DNA of 63,106 nucleotides, filler included, from Octopus bimaculoides (Eukaryota), in NCBI RefSeq assembly GCF_001194135.2. It is 7 parts of 6 records of this genome, joined end to end, with 100 filler letters (N's around TTAATTAATTAA, not from the genome) between each part and the next. Parts side by side here need not be neighbours in the genome. Positions count along the whole stretch, not along the records: positions 22,038 to 32,935 come from NC_068983.1; 6 more parts are not named here. The stretch is one strand, 5' to 3'. The position numbers and the translations under genes are program-made. The stretch's first letter is position 1. The number at the start of each line of letters is the position of its first letter. The notes under the pieces are model-generated. The model did no database searches and was not told where the DNA came from. It was given only the letters and a program-made list of their open reading frames with translations. This document shows positions 21,246 through 31,137 of this stretch, piece by piece.

Positions 21246-22315
21246 CATATATATATATATACATATTGCTCCAACATCGCCACAATCAAATAACTCTAGG
21301 GAGTAGAACCTCAGGTCTTTTAGTTCCTCATATAGCATGCTATTAGTGATCTCAGTGCATTTCTTTGATTATCGCGTTTGCCATTCCCTAAAATTTTTCT
21401 TCTTCGCTCCGTTTATCATGCGCGTAGTAATATTCCAACGTTCAAATTTAGAATCAATTATATCGATCTCGGTTATAATCATGGCCCTTCAGCAGTCTGC
21501 TTCTATCCTTCTCCACTCATTAACAAATATAAACCAAAGAGCATTCGGCATTGTTTATCTAATTCCACTAATCCTTTGCACAATTCCACCTTTCCAGAAT
21601 GTAACTAAGTTACCCTTTTCCCTGCAGACATCGATCATTTTCCCAGAGAAGACCAAATAACGCATCATCCGAATTGAATTTGGCAGCTAAGGAATATTTT
21701 ATATCTTGACAGCCATCCTATTACTATCTAAAAAACGATTATATGCTTAAATGGAAACGAAAAAGAAAAACAAACAAGCAATGGAGGGAAATCCTAACAC
21801 TAGATAAAAGAATTGACCTCTATATTTTCCGCAAATTCATGCACATATTCACACACTAATACGTCCATACACTGGCATAAAGCATGTGTGCGTGTATGTG
21901 TGTGAGCGTATATATATATATATATATATATATATATNNNNNNNNNNNNNNNNNNNNNNNNNNNNNNNNNNNNNNNNNNNNTTAATTAATTAANNNNNNN
22001 NNNNNNNNNNNNNNNNNNNNNNNNNNNNNNNNNNNNNATGCTCATATATCATTTGTATTATGTATATATATAATACAAATGATACATGAGCATATGCATG
22101 TATACATACATATATGTACATACCAACATCTACATGTATATATTGATGCATATACGGGTACAAGACGACAAAAAATGAACGGGAACATAAAACGGACTGT
22201 TTTTTACGGATAATAGAATGAACACAGGAAAACAGACAAGTCATCATGGAACACACACACACATACACAACACACACACACACACACAAACACACACAAA
22301 CACACACACACACAC

Positions 22316-22370
<55 letters not shown>

Positions 22371-22800
22371 TGTGAAATTAGATACTAATAAGACTTTTTC
22401 AACACTCATATTATCGTGGTCCTTTTTCAGAAAAGTGCTCAATAAATCAGTTCAACTACATTAAAAATATCAGAGCTGTGACAAAGTTTAGATGATAAAC
22501 TAGGTGAGTGACGAACTCGAAAATATTCTAATATAAAATTGATGTAAATTCTGTTTACCTACTTTTCCAGACACATCTATCAAGTCATGTTTCTTTGCTA
22601 GGATACTAACAAGAGACATCAGCTGATATTTCAATAAAGAAAATATGTGTCGGTATGTCAGCTAAGACAGCTGTCATACGCAGCTGGCAGTTGAACATAA
22701 AAAGGAACAAGAAAACATGTACATATGTAAGTATCTATGTATGAATGTATGTGCATATGGTGTATCTATTCGTATGAATATATGTTACAATATACGTATA

Positions 22801-22858
<58 letters not shown>

Positions 22859-23599: not shown

Positions 23600-25470
23600 T
23601 TATTGCATCTTCCCTCGTCGGGTCTAGTCGACCTCCGTTTCTGTCAATGACTTATCCTAAATATTTTATTTTCGATGAGAAAAATGTGCACTTTACTTCA
23701 CTCTAAGTAAAGCCGTATTCTCTAATTTTTTCGAACACATTTTGCTTGCTCTATATGTTGGTCTCGGGATTCGCTTTTTATGAGTATATCATCCAGATAT
23801 GGAATTGCTAATTCACAGTCCGCTAAAATTTTATCCATAATCTGTTGAAAAATCGACGGTGTGAATTTTAAGCCAAATCGTAACCTATTGTATTTATATA
23901 ATCCTTTATGTGTATTAATTGTTTGGTATTTAGAGCATTCATCGTCTTCTCTAATTTGTAGGTACGCATCAGAGAGATCCAATCTAGAAAATATTTTGTC
24001 ACCGTTTAATTTTGCAAATATAACCTCCGGAGTAGGTAGCGGATAATGGAAGGTTTTTAGACATTCGTTTAAACCAGTGGAAAAATCAGCACACGCTCTG
24101 ATTTTATTATTGTTTCTCAATGTACACAATTTGTGATGCCTATTGAATGTATTTCACTTTTTGGATAACTCTAATTTTTTCTAGTATGTTTAACTCTAAG
24201 TTTATCTGTTCTAACGCTGCGAAAGGTAGAATTCGTTTTGATTTAAACACTGGTATGGCGGTTTCTTTTATTTGAAACTTCGCCTTCGTTTTGGTGCACA
24301 GACGTTATTCATCAGACAGATCTTCAGGAAGAATTCAAAAATTTTCTTTCTTCCAATTCGTCTGACGACTTATTTGTACTGGGGGTAAAACATTTCACAT
24401 TTTTACAGCAAAGCTTAATGGGGAGGTCCCATAAGTTAAATATTTCCACTTAGATTTTTCGAATGAATTCGTCGTATTATTTAACACGAAAACTTTGGCT
24501 TTTAATGTTTGTCCACGAAATGTATCTTCAGTTAACATTTCGCTCTTACAATGTAATTTTTTCCTGAAACACCGGGTGCAATTTTCGAAGTTTCTTTTAA
24601 TCTGGGTCTCCCGATTTTTTCTGTGTATCTGTGTTAATTATCGAGATATCAATGCTCGTATCCAATTGTAAATTTTCGTTTGTGTTATTAATTTTTGCAT
24701 ACACAAATTTCCTTTGAGGTTTCTTCGCATTTCTTGTCACCAATAACTTGTTTGCGTGATTTTTCTATTGAACCGTTTTTTAGGTTTTGTTTTGCTGTGC
24801 GATTTTTCTCACTTATCTTACCATACTTGAAGCGTTTTGTATCTTTAAACAGACAGTTACTTTCAAAATGTAGACCACTGCACCCATAACATGGATTCGG
24901 TCTTGACATTTTTTCTGTTTTCATATCCATTATGGGTCGACACGCATGAATATGAGATCAGTTTTTTCCTTCAGTTTTACCTGCGTCATGTCTAAGATTT
25001 ATGATCCTCTGGCATTCTTCTGCTACTGCCTTTAGAGTTAACTTTTAGTTCTGTAGTTATTTTGTTAAAATCCGGGAAAGTATATCTCCATCTTAGCTTG
25101 CAGTAAATCACTGGGCAAAAAATAGACATATAATCATGTCCAGGGTTAGTTCATTTAATTTGAATTTTTCACACTTTCTGTTAACAACATAACTCCAGCA
25201 AAGGTGATGAAATCGTCATCACCTTTTTTGACCAAATTTAAACGTTGCTGGCAAGTATTGAACTACTTTGAATGAAAATTTTCGACAAAATATTAATTGT
25301 TTCATCGAAACGAATTTCACCTGGTTTGTTCAGCAGAATATAATTACTATATGTTTGGTGTTCGGCAGGGGATAATTTTCTTAAAAGTAGTCGTACATTT
25401 TTCTCGTTCGCCCAAGTTTTACAATTGTCTTTGATGATTTCTTCTTATCTTCGAAAATATGCAGAAACAA
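23600..25470 (-). mobile_element. Ty3/Gypsy LTR retrotransposon relic (gag, zinc knuckle, protease, RT), pseudogenised
   Basis: Gag-like WANEKNVRLLLRKLSPAEHQTYSNYIL at about 25.4 kb, CCHC knuckle CYGCSGLHFESNC at about 24.88 kb, protease LQLDTSIDISIIN at about 24.65 kb, and RT ORF 23722-24129 with CADFSTGLN, LDLSDAYLQI, GLYKYNRLRFGL and YLDD. No RNase H, integrase or LTR seen. Confidence 0.92.
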
Positions 25471-26437
25471 TAATCCCTTCGTCTGCATTGTGATTAGTTG
25501 TATTACATTGGGACTGAACCTCAATTACGTGATAGCACCAATAATGTTCTAAGTACACGGCTATTTCTGCATCACTATAAGTGCATTTGATCTATAAAGT
25601 CTGCTCTCCAAACTATTTTGGTGGTAGCTATATGAAAACTATATATCTCTATATTTCATCGTTTATCAGGGATCTCTGTAAAATTCTAAATGAGAAGCCA
25701 TTGCCACGAAGGATTTAAAATTTATTATTAGTTCCAAATATTTATCAGTATATAGACCTTGTTTGTAATATTCTCAATGGACTTTAGTTTTATCAGCTAA
25801 ATGTTAGGTTAGGCATGTTAAAGAATATATGGATTGGAGATATTTACGTACTCTGTTAAATCAATATATCAAATATTTACTTGCTGGGTATAGTTGCACA
25901 TTATGAACCAATTACATATTTATGTGAATGCAAAATTCAGAAATATTAGTAGCTTGCCTTTTTAGTAATCATAATTTTGCTTTTTCATTTCTCTTGTATA
26001 GACTTTAGAATTATTGTTCCGTTGTTATGATTACTTAAGGCCAGTGCAACAAAGTACATGAATATTTGGTTCTGACGATGTAGTCTTAGGTTCTATTAAA
26101 CCGTTCGGAATGTTTGGTGCCTTTACGATAAGCAGGATCGAACAACACTTCGTAAATGGGGATTTATAGGCAACCATTAAGTATGAAGCTATAGACTAAG
26201 GGTCCTGCTCATTAATGGTGGACAAAATTCAGTGCCCAGATTAATATCAGTATCTGACAACTGTGTGACTTCAGCAAGATCAACTCATGTGCAATAATTT
26301 GTGCAATGTCACCGTTTTGAGGAAAACATTCACTCTCCTTAACAGCTAATCGAGTGTACCTGGAAACTTTATTGCTGCTGTTTTTCGTCCTCTCCCTCCT
26401 CATAGATCCAGGAAAAGTGAATATTCTTATATTTGCA

Positions 26438-26487
<50 letters not shown>

Positions 26488-27432
26488 GAATATGAAGGAT
26501 ATATTTCACTGGTGATCTAAACGAATAGGTACGCTGAGTAAGTGCTATAAATGGCCATTCGTTATGTTCCAAGTTGACGGCAGGAGCGGGACATAGGGAT
26601 CTGCATTAGGGATCCGAGTTAGCAGGTAGATATTGTATTAGAAGAAAAAGACCAACAAAAACTAAGGCAGACGAGTATCTCAAGTCATTTAGAATATTTA
26701 CTTAGGGTAACGTGAATTTGAAGTCTTGCAGCTGTTTCTGGGATATATCCAAGTGAAAGGCTAGCATGACTGCCCTCCCTTATTTCATGCCTCCATCGTA
26801 GATGGGTAGATTTGCAAGTAGATATAATTTTGGATAACGTGTAAAAGAAGTAGATAAGTGAAATACGCAGACTTATCGGACTAGGTGAGTGAAATATATA
26901 ACCGATGTGTATAACCTACATTCGCCACAGGTAGATCACAGACCACGTACGCCTAAGATCAATTATATTACCAACATTGTCACCACATCTTTTCTTAAAT
27001 ATAAATATTGAATTAACAAGCCTTCATATCTCATGGCAGTACGGTTTGATTTCAGGAAATGTTTATACCTCTTTGAGAAATTAGTGAGGCCAATTAACGC
27101 AGTGGTTTCATTTCTGAATTGTCCTATACTTAATTTATAGCATTTCGAGAACAAACGACAGTGTCCTTCCAGGGAAAAGTTCAACGCAGGGAGTAAGCAA
27201 TGTATCACAATATCGAGATATTTCAAAGCTATTAATTTAATTAACTAGTTTCTTGATCTATATCTTCCTGAAGTATTTCATGATAATAAAGAATGTAAAC
27301 TAAGGAAAGACAATGTACTAAAACGAGTTTACAATTTTAATGGATGTTTTCGATATCAGTGAATACTTTCACTGGAAAAAGATACATAAGTTTTGCCAAG
27401 AATTAGCTTTCTCATCGCAGATCGGTGGTTAT

Positions 27433-27477
27433 CGGACGCTGACGAAGGGAAATAACCCTGAAACTCGAGTACGTTCG
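27433..27477 (+). ncRNA. Type I hammerhead ribozyme, unit A (GUA cleavage site after 27471)
   Basis: cggacg-CTGACGA-aggg(aaataa)ccct-GAAA-ctcgag-TA-cgttcg. Stem I is 6 bp, stem II is 4 bp, stem III is palindromic, and all conserved core bases are present. Confidence 0.9.
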
Positions 27478-27783
27478 TGCTACAGATCACGATGAGAGGG
27501 ATAACTTCCCTTGGCAAAACATACAGGACACAGAAGTGTGTCGATAAACCAGCTGGAGGAAATGTTCTCCTGGGGCTAAAAGCAACAGTAACATCCACCC
27601 CTAGGGGTCAGCCACATTTAAGTGGCAATATACTTCACTTTATCGTGCAGTTACTGTTAATACTTCGTTTAGAGAATTAACATTGCTTGTTTTCACTTTT
27701 TCGATATTAGTAAATAATTTCACTGGAAAAAGATACATAAGTTTTGCCAAGAATTAGCTTTCTCATCGCAGATCGGTGGCTAT

Positions 27784-27828
27784 CGGACGCTGACGAAGGG
27801 AAATAACCCTGAAACTCGAGTCCGTTCG
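27784..27828 (+). ncRNA. Type I hammerhead ribozyme, unit B (GUC cleavage site after 27822)
   Basis: Identical core to unit A except that H17 is C. Confidence 0.9.
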
Positions 27829-28438
27829 TGCTACAGATCACGATGAGAGGGATAACTTCCCTTAGCAAAACATACAGGACACAGAAGTGTGTCGATAAGC
27901 CAGCTGGAGGAGATATCCTCCTGGGGCTAAAAGCAACAANNNNNNNNNNNNNNNNNNNNNNNNNNNNNNNNNNNNNNNNNNNNNNNNNNNNNNNNNNNNN
28001 NNNNNNNNNNNNNNNNNNNNNNNNNNNNNNNNNNNNNNNNNNNNNNNNNNNNNNNNNNNNNNNNNNNNNNNNNNNNNNNNNNNNNNNNNNNNNNNNNNNN
28101 NNNNNNNNNNNNNNNNNNNNNNNNTACGTTCGTGCTACAGATCACGATGAGAGGGATAACTTCCCTTGGCAAAACATACAGGACACAGAAGTGTGTCGAT
28201 AAACCAGCTGGAGGAAATGTTCTCCTGGGGCTAAAAGCAACAGTAACATCCACCCCTAGGGGTCAGCCACATTTAAGTGGCAATATACTTCACTTTATCG
28301 TGCAGTTACTGTTAATACTTCGTTTAGAGAATTAACATTGCTTGTTTTCACTTTTTCGATATTAGTAAATAATTTCACTGGAAAAAGATACATAAGTTTT
28401 GCCAAGAATTAGCTTTCTCATCGCAGATCGGTGGCTAT

Positions 28439-28483
28439 CGGACGCTGACGAAGGGAAATAACCCTGAAACTCGAGTCCGTTCG
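28439..28483 (+). ncRNA. Type I hammerhead ribozyme, unit B copy (GUC cleavage site after 28477)
   Basis: Same sequence as 27784-27828. May be a redundant assembly copy. Confidence 0.85.
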
Positions 28484-28719
28484 TGCTACAGATCACGATG
28501 AGAGGGATAACTTCCCTTAGCAAAACATACAGGACACAGAAGTGTGTCGATAAGCCAGCTGGAGGAGATATCCTCCTGGGGCTAAAAGCAACAATAACAT
28601 CCATCTCTAGGGGTCAGCCACATTTAAGTGGCAATATACTTCACTTTATCTTGCAGTTACTGTTAATACCTCGTTTAGAGAATTAACATTGCATGAATAT
28701 ATATATTTTATCGTTTATC

Positions 28720-28895: not shown

Positions 28896-29047
28896 GCTCA
28901 AAGCACACAGACAGTTATCTACATGTATACACGATGATCTTTTAGCTTTCATTTCCAGTGTACGAGATCGACTCAAAAGCCTCGAATTGCAACTCCTTTT
29001 CTATATGTGTGTGTGTAAGAGTGAATGTGTGTGTGCCTGTGTGTGCT

Positions 29048-29147
<100 letters not shown>

Positions 29148-29519
29148 TCTGTGTGTGTATGTGTGTGTGTTTGTCTGTGTGGATTTGCATGTGTGTGGAT
29201 GTGTATGTGTGTTCGAGTTGTAACAGCTTAGCGAATGACTTGATATAATACCAGGTTTTGAAATAGAATAATTATATCATGGTTCAGTCATGTAAGAGAG
29301 AAACAATGATTATACTTACATTACTTTCATTCTGTGTGATAAATGGAAGATAACAGTGTATAATAATGGTAAAAATTTATCTTCCTATTGACACATACAT
29401 GCATAGACACGAACGCACACACACACAGACGCACACACATTTTTGTCTCTCGTAGTCCGAAAAAGAGGCTTCTGCAACTCCTTGCTCAAAAGGATGCACC
29501 AATGTTTCTTTATAGACTA

Positions 29520-29724: not shown

Positions 29725-29761
<37 letters not shown>

Positions 29762-29784
29762 TGTGCGTTTGTGTGTGTATGTTA

Positions 29785-29834
<50 letters not shown>

Positions 29835-31137
29835 CGATAGATAGATAAATAGATAGAAAGAGAGATATGCATATATGTACGAAGGTGAGAGTGATAGTTG
29901 TACCCTCGTATGTTAAAAAATGAGTAACACTAGCACGCACACTTCTACTGAATAAAGTTCATATATATGTATAGAGAAACGCACATAGACACATATGTAT
30001 ATACTCTGCACTTAAATGTGAATTTACGTGCGTGTAACTCGTCAAAGAAGAAGTTTACACTCCCTTGCGGTTGCTATGTCTAAAATCTCCAGCCATGTTG
30101 TTTTATAAATCGTTACAACTTGGTAGTTAGAAATATATCGTGAGAGACACTCGTTTCTCGTCAACATCTGTTGCGATAATATGAGTTATGCAGGTTATTT
30201 TACCAAGGACTGGGCTTTATGGAGCCATAAACGTACGGTAGAATGTTTTTTTGCAGCTAGTGCGTATCGCATGTGTCTACAACAATGAAAATTACTGCGT
30301 CATTGAAGGAAGGTATAATTCAGGCGAAACATTCACAAATCTGAAGTCTTCCTTGAACCTGAGTCCTTTGTTCAAGCATCGAATATCTGTATGATATGAA
30401 GTCTTGGTCTCGACTCAGTAACCCAAGTAGGGATGTCAGATAGTCATTAAGTTTTTGACGCGCCAGTACGAAATCCCATGGAATATTATGTTTGTAGTGT
30501 TTTTGAACGAGAAACTAATGTACATCCTCATACAAAATAACTTCAATGGCGATCGTCAATACCCGGTAAATATCTAAAATGAATAAGAACTATTTACTGT
30601 TGGTATGTAAACGAAGTCGGTACGCATTGAAACAGTCATCGAAGCTGTAAGTGGAGCCAAGGATAATCTTATATGCAGAAATATCGGGAGCATGTGCAAA
30701 AATGTATTTCGTACTAGGTTAGAATTGTTTTCTTAACCATCTATATATATCTTCAAATACCTTTGACTCAATCAGGAGTACAAATGTAAAAATTGAAATG
30801 GAAACAAAAAACAAACAAAAACGAAATAATAAATGGTCTTATGAATGAAAAATTGGTAATTGCGTTTATTTCCGCCATGTGACACTTATGAAATCAACGT
30901 GTTGTCTATAGAAAAAGTGCTCTTTCGTACGAGTAAATGCCGATGAAGTCATTTCAAACCTTTCCGATTTCCCTTATCAGAACGGCTAGAAATGGTGCAG
31001 CAATTTGACATGTAAGTAATTGTTACCCAGGAAGAGGATTTTTTTATGTTCAAGAGAGTGTATTTGTAAGAAATTGATGAAATACATATGTATTTCATAC
31101 GAGTAGCAAATTGTGGAGGATGGTATTCACTGTACTT

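What the first reader, a model, noticed from the sequence alone, without database searches (positions are those of the whole stretch)
27347..28692. Retrozyme-like tandem array: 351-bp units each with an intact hammerhead ribozyme
Seen in sequence: each complete unit reads cggacg-CUGACGA-aggg(aaauaa)cccu-GAAA-cucgag-UA/UC-cguucg, so every conserved hammerhead core base is present. Stem I is 6 bp and stem II is 4 bp. Stem III is a self-complementary CUCGAG too short to fold alone. Established knowledge: minimal type I hammerheads with palindromic stem III occur in Penelope-like elements and in metazoan non-LTR retrozymes or ribozyme satellites (newt satellite 2, Schistosoma Sm-alpha, coral and mussel retrozymes). 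They cleave as dimers (double hammerheads) and release monomers that circularise. Inference: a transcript through adjacent units would be cut after 27471 and 27822, releasing a 351-nt monomer (27472-27822) that could form a circRNA and be retrotransposed in trans. The unit has no meaningful coding capacity. I cannot tell whether this cephalopod family is already catalogued.
Basis: partly seen in the sequence, partly recalled or inferred. Interest (0 to 1): 0.9.

Follow-up and report, generated by a model that had tools for sequence, protein, structure and literature searches.

The report
Octopus hammerhead-ribozyme tandem repeat (retrozyme)
A short tandem array of 351-bp non-coding units, each carrying a complete type I hammerhead self-cleaving RNA motif, is really there and looks like an octopus member of the known animal 'retrozyme' elements that make small circular RNAs; it is a new example of a known kind, and its activity is untested.

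Summary
Window 27347-28692 (+) is a 351-bp tandem array. Three complete hammerhead (HH) motifs lie at 27433-27477, 27784-27828 and 28439-28483, and a fourth is cut by the N gap. A generic type I descriptor finds these three and none in 3000 simulated pieces. The architecture is the canonical metazoan type I HH, not the minimal Penelope-type: helix I of 6 bp plus an internal loop, helix II of 4 bp plus a 6-nt loop, helix III of 2 bp plus a tetraloop within the 8-nt palindrome ACUCGAGU. The 351-nt unit has no coding capacity and 41.6% GC, and it folds far better than shuffles (z = -5.7). These features match the non-LTR retrozymes of Cervera and de la Pena 2020.

Caveats:
- The 10.1-11.1 pair is A-U, not the usual G-C.
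- Rfam 15 reports no hammerhead even at E<=10.
- The 470 nt on each side of the gap are identical, so copy number is uncertain. An in-phase gap would be 232 nt; the N run is 185.
- The only relative found is one Octopus bimaculoides pseudo-protein translated from another copy, so covariation could not be tested.

Cleavage, circularisation and mobilisation are inferred. Verdict: new member of a known kind, moderate interest.

The parts
27347..28692 (+). The whole tandem array of 351-bp units. It runs from unit position 227 to unit position 215-218 and is interrupted by the N gap.
   Evidence: No other copy of the unit lies elsewhere in the piece.
27347..27471 (+). Partial first unit (unit positions 227-351, B-type). 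It ends in hammerhead 1.
   Evidence: 5 differences in 125 nt against the 3' end of unit A.
27433..27477 (+). Hammerhead 1 (GUA). Predicted cleavage between 27471 and 27472.
   Evidence: Its local minimum-energy fold already contains helices I and II.
27472..27822 (+). Complete unit A, the predicted 351-nt excised monomer or circular RNA.
   Evidence: Circular MFE is -105.5 kcal/mol against -75.1 +/- 5.3 for shuffles (z = -5.7). GC is 41.6% and 63% of bases are paired. There is no Pfam domain and no ORF longer than 83 aa.
27760..27783 (+). 5' strand of the helix I extension (9 + 4 + 5 bp) and the UAU side of internal loop 1 of hammerhead 2. Its partner strand is 27829-27852.
   Evidence: The U/C difference at 27429 versus 27780 changes a U-G pair to C-G.
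27784..27828 (+). Hammerhead 2 (GUC). Predicted cleavage between 27822 and 27823.
   Evidence: A competing CGGAC/GUCCG helix is 6 kcal/mol more stable than the enforced hammerhead fold.
27823..27939 (+). Start of unit B (unit positions 1-117), cut off by the gap.
   Evidence: 6 differences in 117 nt against unit A. It is identical to 28478-28594.
27940..28124 (.). Assembly gap of 185 N. An in-phase array would need 232 + 351n nt here.
28125..28132 (+). Remnant of hammerhead 3: U16.1 and A17, then the 3' strand of helix I (CGTTCG). The rest lies in the gap.
   Evidence: H17 = A fits the alternating A-type/B-type unit pattern.
28127..28477 (+). Complete unit A', 351/351 identical to unit A.
28439..28483 (+). 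Hammerhead 4 (GUC). Predicted cleavage between 28477 and 28478.
28478..28692 (+). Truncated last unit B' (unit positions 1-215). This is the end of the array.
   Evidence: 10 differences in 215 nt against unit A. BLAST extends the match to 28695.

Best explanation
This is a locus of a non-autonomous, non-LTR 'retrozyme' family of an octopus: a short dispersed tandem array of 351-bp non-coding units, each ending in a canonical type I hammerhead ribozyme.

Proposed mechanism, step by step:
1. Shown in the sequence: at least 2 and probably 4 hammerheads lie 351 nt apart on the + strand, with all invariant core bases and three helices.
2. Shown in the sequence: the unit is AT-rich and non-coding, and it is predicted to fold into a highly self-paired structure whose main stem is the extension of hammerhead helix I.
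3. Inferred: a read-through or unit-internal promoter makes an oligomeric + strand transcript.
4. Inferred: each hammerhead cuts after GUA or GUC. It acts either alone (helix III of 2 bp plus a UCGA tetraloop) or paired with a neighbouring copy through the 8-nt palindrome ACUCGAGU. [quoted passage not shown]
5. Inferred from PMC7229834: a host RtcB-type tRNA ligase circularises the monomers.
6. Inferred from PMC7229834 and bioRxiv 10.64898/2026.07.22.740005: the RNA is reverse-transcribed and integrated in trans by a Penelope-like element, giving tandem copies at new loci.
For: - Motif and periodicity. Chance expectation is about 0 (0 hits in 3000 simulations).
- Architecture: helix I of 6 bp, then internal loop UAU/U, then 5 + 4 + 9 bp; helix II of 4 bp with loop AAAUAA; helix III inside an 8-nt palindrome with duplex energy -10.7 kcal/mol. 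This equals the 'canonical metazoan type-I HHR' of PMC4209133.
- Circular monomer MFE has z = -5.7 against dinucleotide shuffles, and GC is 41.6%.
- No coding capacity.
- No LTRs or inverted repeats around the array.
- A unit size of 351 bp lies inside the 170-400 nt range of metazoan retrozymes, close to the mussel (350-390) and axolotl (330/350) units (PMC7229834).
- A second, diverged copy exists in Octopus bimaculoides. It is the only hit among 5.8 billion clusters and among 1.84 billion representatives: UniRef A0A0L8IHK6, a 54-aa translation of the minus strand of the unit. Its residues across the hammerhead core (FQGYFPSSASD) are identical to those of the window. U11.1 is fixed by its Gln codon.
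- Its change VLE->VSG in helix III implies U15.3-A16.3 -> C-G if the Ser codon is TCN, which is a pairing-preserving double change.
- Cephalopod genomes carry Penelope elements, and the giant squid has 235 Rfam Hammerhead_1 hits (PMC6962438).
Against: - Rfam 15 covariance models report no hammerhead here, even at E<=10 in a 121-nt search.
- The 10.1-11.1 pair is A-U instead of the highly conserved G-C (PMC4209133). This could lower activity.
- In the GUC copies a competing helix (CGGAC/GUCCG) buries the cleavage site. The hammerhead fold costs +4.3 to +6.0 kcal/mol against the local MFE.
- Within-locus variation gives no significant sign of selection. There is 1 neutral change in 45 compared hammerhead nucleotides against about 2 expected, and no double compensatory change in the rest of the unit.
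- No genomic DNA of other copies could be fetched, so covariation and copy number are untested.
- No Penelope-like ORF was found in the parts of the piece that were scanned.
- No convincing target-site duplication was found; only ATG on both sides.
- Copy number at this locus is uncertain because of the gap.
Confidence: 0.7

Rival explanations
1. It is a decayed or inactive ribozyme satellite. The array descends from a retrozyme or hammerhead satellite, but this family's hammerhead no longer cleaves efficiently. The A10.1-U11.1 pair, the competing fold and the weak helix III would be the causes. The locus would then be just a small dead tandem repeat that makes no circular RNA.
For: - The pair at 10.1-11.1 is A-U.
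- Rfam gives no hit.
- An alternative pairing is more stable than the hammerhead fold.
- The available copies show no statistical excess of conservation in the hammerhead.
- Only one other copy was detectable in the protein databases.
Against: - All 11 invariant core positions plus A15.1-U16.1 and H17 are intact in all three readable copies. The only difference inside the motif is A versus C at position 17, and both are allowed.
- The Octopus bimaculoides copy keeps the core at the amino-acid level, while about 16% of its residues outside the core differ.
- Compensatory changes at 10.1-11.1 occur in the functional cricket satellite hammerheads (PMC2837043).
- Minimum-energy folding never reproduces the hammerhead core, so the energy penalty is not diagnostic.
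Confidence: 0.2
2. It is part of a Penelope-like element, not an independent retrozyme. The 351-bp repeats would be pseudo-LTR or partial-tandem termini of a Penelope-like element whose coding body is deleted or lies outside the piece.
For: - Penelope-like elements carry type I hammerheads in their pLTRs and insert as partial tandems (PMC4209133, PMC8557442).
- Retrozymes are phylogenetically close to pLTRs (bioRxiv 10.64898/2026.07.22.740005).
- The array abuts a short (TA)n run at its 3' side.
Against: - No RT or GIY-YIG coding remnant adjoins the array. The only RT remnant is 3.3 kb away on the opposite strand and sits with a CCHC zinc-knuckle ORF and DUF7083. I read that combination, together with its YLDD motif, as an LTR-type element; that reading rests on my own knowledge.
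- No Pfam domain was found in the + frames downstream.
- The hammerhead has the canonical architecture, not the min-HHR architecture of metazoan Penelope-like elements (against PMC4209133).
- The repeat is a head-to-tail array of whole short units.
Confidence: 0.08
3. It is a chance hammerhead-like motif in an ordinary tandem repeat, multiplied by repeat amplification or by an assembly artefact.
For: - All copies at the locus descend from one unit, so three matches count as one independent event.
- Rfam is silent.
- The 470 nt across the gap are identical, so part of the array could be an assembly duplicate.
Against: - A single match to the generic descriptor is already improbable: 0 hits in 3000 simulated 10.7-kb pieces, both strands.
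- The family-specific 19-base pattern occurs only about as often as chance predicts in 596 Gb of prokaryotic DNA (2 hits).
- The motif sits exactly where a retrozyme hammerhead should, at the base of the unit's main stem, and its helix I continues into a 24-nt extension.
- The motif is kept in a diverged Octopus bimaculoides copy.
Confidence: 0.02

Closest known systems
Metazoan non-LTR retrozymes (Cervera and de la Pena 2020, PMC7229834), especially the Mytilus galloprovincialis units of about 350-390 bp
   Same: - Tandem non-coding units of a few hundred bp, each with one type I hammerhead on one strand.
- GC below 50%.
- No LTR, PBS or PPT.
- A predicted highly self-paired monomer.
- Helix III of 2 bp plus a tetraloop, described there as typical of invertebrate hammerheads.
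- A mollusc host.
   Different: - No sequence similarity to any described family could be tested.
- The A10.1-U11.1 closing pair of helix II.
- Expression and circularity are not shown.
- Only a short array (up to about 4 units) is seen here.
Newt satellite 2 and axolotl Rtz_331/Rtz_353, and Schistosoma Sm-alpha hammerhead repeats
   Same: - Unit size of about 330-350 bp.
- A type I hammerhead with a 6-bp helix I followed by an internal loop.
- A 4-bp helix II with a 6-nt A-rich loop. Here it is AAAUAA; from my memory the Schistosoma loop is CAAAUA.
- A palindromic helix III that allows a double-hammerhead.
   Different: - The amphibian helix III is weaker (1 bp plus a tetraloop in HHR_Amex1), and dimeric cleavage was shown experimentally there.
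- Those families have 10^4-10^5 copies.
- The specific loop 1-loop 2 contacts could not be checked here.
Minimal hammerheads of Penelope-like elements (Cervera and de la Pena 2014, PMC4209133)
   Same: - Type I topology.
- A palindromic stretch at positions 15.2-16.2.
- Presumed dependence on a second copy.
- A likely evolutionary and mobilisation link to Penelope-like elements.
   Different: - Min-HHRs have helix II of 7-8 bp, helix I of 4-5 bp, a bulged base after A9, a G10.1-C11.1 pair and no real helix III.
- They lie in pLTRs that flank an RT-endonuclease ORF.
- None of these features is seen here.
Plant LTR retrozymes and hammerhead viroid-like circular RNAs
   Same: Hammerhead-bounded non-coding units that are thought to propagate through circular RNA.
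   Different: - Plant retrozymes use type III hammerheads inside LTRs, have a PBS and PPT, and measure 600-1000 nt.
- Viroid-like and HDV-like agents carry ribozymes in both polarities.
- Here there is one polarity only and the units are encoded in DNA.

Membership tests
Hammerhead ribozyme, type I | Invariant core: C3 U4 G5 A6 N7 G8 A9, G12 A13 A14, the A15.1-U16.1 pair, and H17 (not G) at the cleavage site | tested here: met
   The sequence CUGACGA...GAAA...U-A/C is present in all three readable copies.
Hammerhead ribozyme, type I | Three helices around the core, with helix I open-ended (type I topology) | tested here: met
   Helix I is 6 bp plus an extension, helix II is 4 bp plus a 6-nt loop, and helix III is 2 bp plus a tetraloop or an 8-bp intermolecular palindrome. 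The generic descriptor gives 3 hits against 0 in 3000 simulations.
Hammerhead ribozyme, type I | The highly conserved G10.1-C11.1 pair closing helix II | tested here: not met
   The pair is A10.1-U11.1 in all copies. U11.1 is also fixed in the O. bimaculoides copy. The pair is conserved but not invariant: compensatory changes at these positions are reported in cricket satellite hammerheads (PMC2837043).
Hammerhead ribozyme, type I | A score above threshold with the Rfam hammerhead covariance models | tested here: not met
   No hammerhead family was reported at E<=10, either in the 10.9-kb piece or in a 121-nt window around the motif.
Hammerhead ribozyme, type I | Covariation of the helices and conservation of the core among homologues | tested here: inconclusive
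   Only one outside copy was found, and it is known only as protein (P0001). Its core residues are identical, and one implied pairing-preserving double change lies in helix III. The within-locus copies are too similar to be informative.
Hammerhead ribozyme, type I | Site-specific self-cleavage that gives 2',3'-cyclic phosphate and 5'-OH ends | not testable with these tools
   This needs in vitro transcription and cleavage assays.
Metazoan non-LTR retrozyme | Tandem repeats of about 150-450 bp, each with one type I hammerhead | tested here: met
   The period is 351 bp, with one hammerhead per unit on the + strand only.
Metazoan non-LTR retrozyme | Non-coding, with no LTRs, and GC below 50% | tested here: met
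   The longest stop-free stretch is 83 aa and has no Pfam match. No flanking direct or inverted repeats were found. GC is 41.6%. PBS and PPT were not searched for specifically.
Metazoan non-LTR retrozyme | The monomer is predicted to form a stable, highly self-paired circular RNA | tested here: met
   Circular MFE is -105.5 kcal/mol with z = -5.7, and 63% of bases are paired.
Metazoan non-LTR retrozyme | Many dispersed genomic loci, optionally with target-site duplications | tested here: inconclusive
   One further copy was inferred in O. bimaculoides. No cephalopod genome is available to the tools. No convincing TSD was found.
Metazoan non-LTR retrozyme | Expression as linear and circular monomeric RNA | not testable with these tools
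   This needs northern blots, RNase R treatment, or divergent-primer RT-PCR.
Metazoan non-LTR retrozyme | Co-occurrence with autonomous Penelope-like elements in the same genome | not tested
   Literature only. Penelope elements are reported in the giant squid (PMC6962438) and Naiad remnants in Octopus spp. (PMC8557442). No Penelope-like element was seen in the scanned parts of this piece.
Penelope-like element min-HHR / pLTR | Helix II of 7-8 bp, helix I of 4-5 bp, a bulged base after A9, and no helix III or a 2-nt one | tested here: not met
   Here helix II is 4 bp, helix I is 6 bp with an extension, there is no bulge, and helix III is present (against PMC4209133).
Penelope-like element min-HHR / pLTR | The repeats flank an RT plus GIY-YIG endonuclease ORF | tested here: not met
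   The only RT remnant is on the minus strand 3.3 kb upstream, with a zinc-knuckle ORF and DUF7083 nearby. The + frames downstream have no domain. The minus frames downstream and the + frames upstream were checked only by ORF length.

The most novel reading that the evidence does not exclude
This octopus family may be a naturally active hammerhead variant with an A10.1-U11.1 closing pair that escapes the Rfam models. It would work as a double-hammerhead through its 8-nt palindromic helix III. The two unit types (GUA-ending and GUC-ending) alternate in a 702-bp higher-order repeat, which could reflect propagation through a dimeric 702-nt circular RNA copied by rolling-circle reverse transcription. 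If so, cephalopods would hold an overlooked, abundant class of ribozyme-made circular RNAs.
Probability: 0.12. Interest if true: 0.55.

Novelty: new member of a known kind. Interest (0 to 1): 0.35.

Why it matters
If it is active, it extends ribozyme-made small circular RNAs (retrozymes) to cephalopods. No paper in the searched library describes them in that group; only a count of Rfam hammerhead hits in the giant squid was found. It also shows that standard Rfam annotation misses this family. The family offers a natural hammerhead with an A-U pair at 10.1-11.1 for structure-function work. It is also a compact, naturally occurring unit that could be studied as a model for making circular RNA in a neurobiologically interesting animal. 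It does not change the current picture of how retrozymes work.

Tried and rejected
- Rfam cmscan of the whole piece and of 121 nt around the motif gave no hammerhead. All listed 'miRNA' hits lie on simple repeats.
- Tandem Repeats Finder did not report the 351-bp period, because fewer than 2 copies lie on each side of the gap.
- I used pseudo-ORFs of the unit as bait to fetch other copies.
  - The 80-aa minus-strand ORF gave one hit, O. bimaculoides A0A0L8IHK6.
  - The encoding DNA of that hit and of the window ORF is not on record.
  - The 72-aa plus-strand ORF found nothing.
  - The other two hits of the representative search are unrelated repeat proteins.
- Pattern scans of metagenome, prokaryotic-genome and viral collections gave only chance matches, 2, 2 and 0. 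The two metagenome matches were inspected and lack complementary helix I strands; I read both as coding sequence.
- A search for a target-site duplication found only ATG on both sides and an ATTTTA about 13 nt away, which is not convincing.
- A search for compensatory changes among the unit variants found none.
- A search for a Penelope-like element in the piece found only a degenerate RT remnant on the opposite strand, which I read as LTR-type.
- I rejected an HDV-like or viroid-like integrated agent, because there is a ribozyme on one strand only and no ORF.
Full report
**1. What is in the sequence**

Window 27347-28692 on the + strand is a head-to-tail array with a 351-nt period. It is interrupted by an N run at 27940-28124. 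Tandem Repeats Finder missed the period because fewer than two copies lie on each side of the gap.

The motif CTGACGA-AGGG-AAATAA-CCCT-GAAA-CTCGAG-T-A/C occurs at 27439-27471, 27790-27822 and 28445-28477. It is on the + strand only, with none expected by chance. With helix I included, the three hammerheads are 27433-27477, 27784-27828 and 28439-28483. A fourth is cut by the gap: only U16.1, A17 and the 3' strand of helix I remain, at 28125-28132.

I wrote a generic type I descriptor: 6-bp helix I, CUGANGA, 4-bp helix II, GAAA, a closing pair for helix III, and UH. It finds exactly these three sites and nothing in 3000 first-order Markov simulations of the piece on both strands.

**2. The gap**

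- The left side ends at unit position 117 and the right side begins at unit position 350.
- The offset across the gap is 655 = 351 + 304. With 185 N the two sides are therefore 47 nt out of phase, and a continuous array needs 232 + 351n nt.
- The 470 nt to the right of the gap are 100% identical to 27470-27939, while adjacent units differ by 4-5%.
- Position 17 alternates A, C, A, C along the array. The simplest reading is two unit types in a 702-bp higher-order repeat: B(227-351)-A-B-A-B(1-215).
- That reading gives 1393 bp if the gap is really 232 nt, which is close to the scaffolder's estimate.
- The alternative is that the two contig ends overlap and the locus is only 691 bp. This cannot be excluded, but it sits badly with a positive gap estimate.
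- In either case two hammerheads flank one complete unit, 27472-27822.

**3. Anatomy of the ribozyme**

- Helix I is CGGACG/CGUUCG, 6 bp with one G-U. After an asymmetric internal loop (UAU on the 5' side, U on the 3' side) it continues for 5 + 4 + 9 further base pairs. This extension is the main stem of the folded unit.
- Helix II is AGGG/CCCU with a 6-nt loop, AAAUAA.
- Helix III can form A15.1-U16.1 and C-G closed by a UCGA tetraloop. The stretch ACUCGAGU is also a perfect 8-nt palindrome that could pair between two copies, with duplex energy -10.7 kcal/mol.

By the definitions in PMC4209133 this is the canonical metazoan type I hammerhead: helix I of 6 bp, helix II of 4 bp, and a short palindromic helix III. 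It is not the minimal Penelope-type motif, which has helix II of 7-8 bp, helix I of 4-5 bp and no helix III.

Three points speak for caution.
- The 10.1-11.1 pair is A-U, whereas G-C is described as highly conserved (PMC4209133). Compensatory changes at these positions do occur in cricket satellite hammerheads (PMC2837043).
- In the GUC copies, CGGAC can pair with GUCCG. This shifts helix I by 3 nt and buries the cleavage site. Enforcing the hammerhead fold costs 4.3 kcal/mol (GUA copy) or 6.0 kcal/mol (GUC copy) against the local minimum.
- Rfam 15 reports no hammerhead, even at E<=10 in a 121-nt search.

**4. The unit**

- The 351-nt monomer has 41.6% GC.
- As a circle its MFE is -105.5 kcal/mol, against -75.1 +/- 5.3 for dinucleotide shuffles (z = -5.7). 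About 63% of bases are paired.
- The longest stop-free stretch in any frame is 83 aa, and none has a Pfam match.
- No LTR-like or inverted repeats flank the array.
- No other copy lies elsewhere in the piece.
- No convincing target-site duplication is present.

**5. Relatives**

No cephalopod genome is reachable with the tools, so I used pseudo-ORFs of the unit as bait.

The 80-aa minus-strand ORF has one hit among 5.8 billion clusters and among 1.84 billion representatives. It is a 54-aa 'uncharacterized protein' of Octopus bimaculoides, UniRef A0A0L8IHK6. This protein is a translation of the minus strand of a diverged copy with a frameshift.

- Across the hammerhead core its residues (FQGYFPSSASD) are identical to those of the window. 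About 16% of its residues outside the core differ.
- Its Gln codon fixes U11.1, so the A-U pair is a family trait rather than a local mutation. Position 10.1 itself falls on a third codon position and is undetermined.
- Its VSG in place of VLE implies C15.3 and G16.3 in place of U and A, if the Ser codon is TCN. That double change preserves pairing in a part of helix III that can only pair in a dimer.
- This is a single observation at the protein level, so I count it as a lead and not as proof.

Everything else led nowhere.
- The encoding DNA is not on record.
- A second bait found nothing.
- Pattern scans of the metagenome, prokaryote and virus collections gave only chance matches.

The host is therefore an octopus or a close relative.

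**6. Surroundings**

- The only coding remnant in the piece is a degenerate retroelement on the minus strand. It comprises RVT_1 at 23677-24072 (E = 2.3e-18), a CCHC zinc-knuckle ORF at 24688-24930, and DUF7083 at 25274-25516. From this combination and a YLDD motif I read it as LTR-type.
- The + frames downstream of the array have no Pfam domain.
- Several microsatellites surround the locus.
- Nothing links the array to an adjacent Penelope-like element.

**7. Interpretation**

The features match, point for point, the metazoan non-LTR retrozymes defined by Cervera and de la Pena (PMC7229834).

- Those are tandem units of 150-450 bp, each with a type I hammerhead. They have low GC, no LTR, PBS or PPT, and self-paired monomers. 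[quoted passage not shown]
- According to that paper, RtcB-type ligase circularises the RNAs and Penelope-like elements probably mobilise them.
- A 2026 preprint argues that they are non-autonomous derivatives of Penelope-like element pLTRs.
- Mussel units measure 350-390 bp. Invertebrate retrozyme hammerheads are described there as having a helix III of 2 bp plus a tetraloop, and the coral and mussel hammerheads tested cleave as monomers.

What is shown here is the motif, the periodicity, the fold potential, the lack of coding capacity and a second octopus copy. Transcription, cleavage, circularisation and retrotransposition are inferred.

**8. Novelty and verdict**

Hammerhead type I hits have been counted in the giant squid genome (235 Rfam matches, PMC6962438), and Penelope elements occur in cephalopods. 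No paper in the searched library describes cephalopod retrozymes.

This is a new member of a known kind. It has two small peculiarities: the A10.1-U11.1 pair with invisibility to Rfam, and an alternating two-type higher-order repeat. A specialist would find it expected rather than surprising.

- Interest: 0.35.
- Confidence that it is a retrozyme-type hammerhead repeat that works, or recently worked, as described: 0.7.
- Confidence that the motif is a genuine hammerhead relative rather than chance: above 0.95.

Noticed in passing
window 27471, 27822, 28126, 28477: Position 17 of successive hammerheads alternates A, C, A, C. The array reads as two unit types in a 702-bp higher-order repeat, starting at unit position 227 and ending at 215 (two periods minus 11 nt). 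This could reflect duplication of a dimer or copying of a dimeric RNA.
   Followed up: partly
window 27784-27788 with 27820-27824 (and 28439-28443 with 28475-28479): In the GUC copies, CGGAC can pair with GUCCG. This shifts helix I by 3 nt and buries the cleavage site. The alternative is 6 kcal/mol more stable than the enforced hammerhead fold, so it may act as a switch against self-cleavage in the circle.
   Followed up: partly
window 23677-25516, minus strand: A degenerate retroelement remnant that I read as LTR-type. It comprises RVT_1 (23677-24072, E = 2.3e-18, motif YLDD), a CCHC zinc-knuckle ORF (24688-24930) and DUF7083 (25274-25516). Stops and frameshifts break it up.
   Followed up: partly
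window 22251-22370 and 29726-29867; also 29006-29212, 26440-26484, 22797-22855: Compound microsatellites (AC)n(ATAG)n and (TG)n(ATAG)n occur twice, about 7.4 kb apart, together with long (TG)n and (TA)n runs. All weak Rfam 'miRNA' matches (mir-297, mir-3149 and others) sit on these simple repeats and are false positives.
   Followed up: no
window 28693-28708: The 3' end of the array abuts a short (TA)n run, ATGAATATATATATTTTA. Some Penelope-like clades prefer (TA)n targets (PMC8557442). This is too short to interpret.
   Followed up: no
P0001 (UniRef A0A0L8IHK6_OCTBM): An annotated 54-aa 'uncharacterized protein' of Octopus bimaculoides is in fact a translation of the antisense strand of this non-coding repeat, running across a frameshift. 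It is therefore a spurious gene model.
   Followed up: yes
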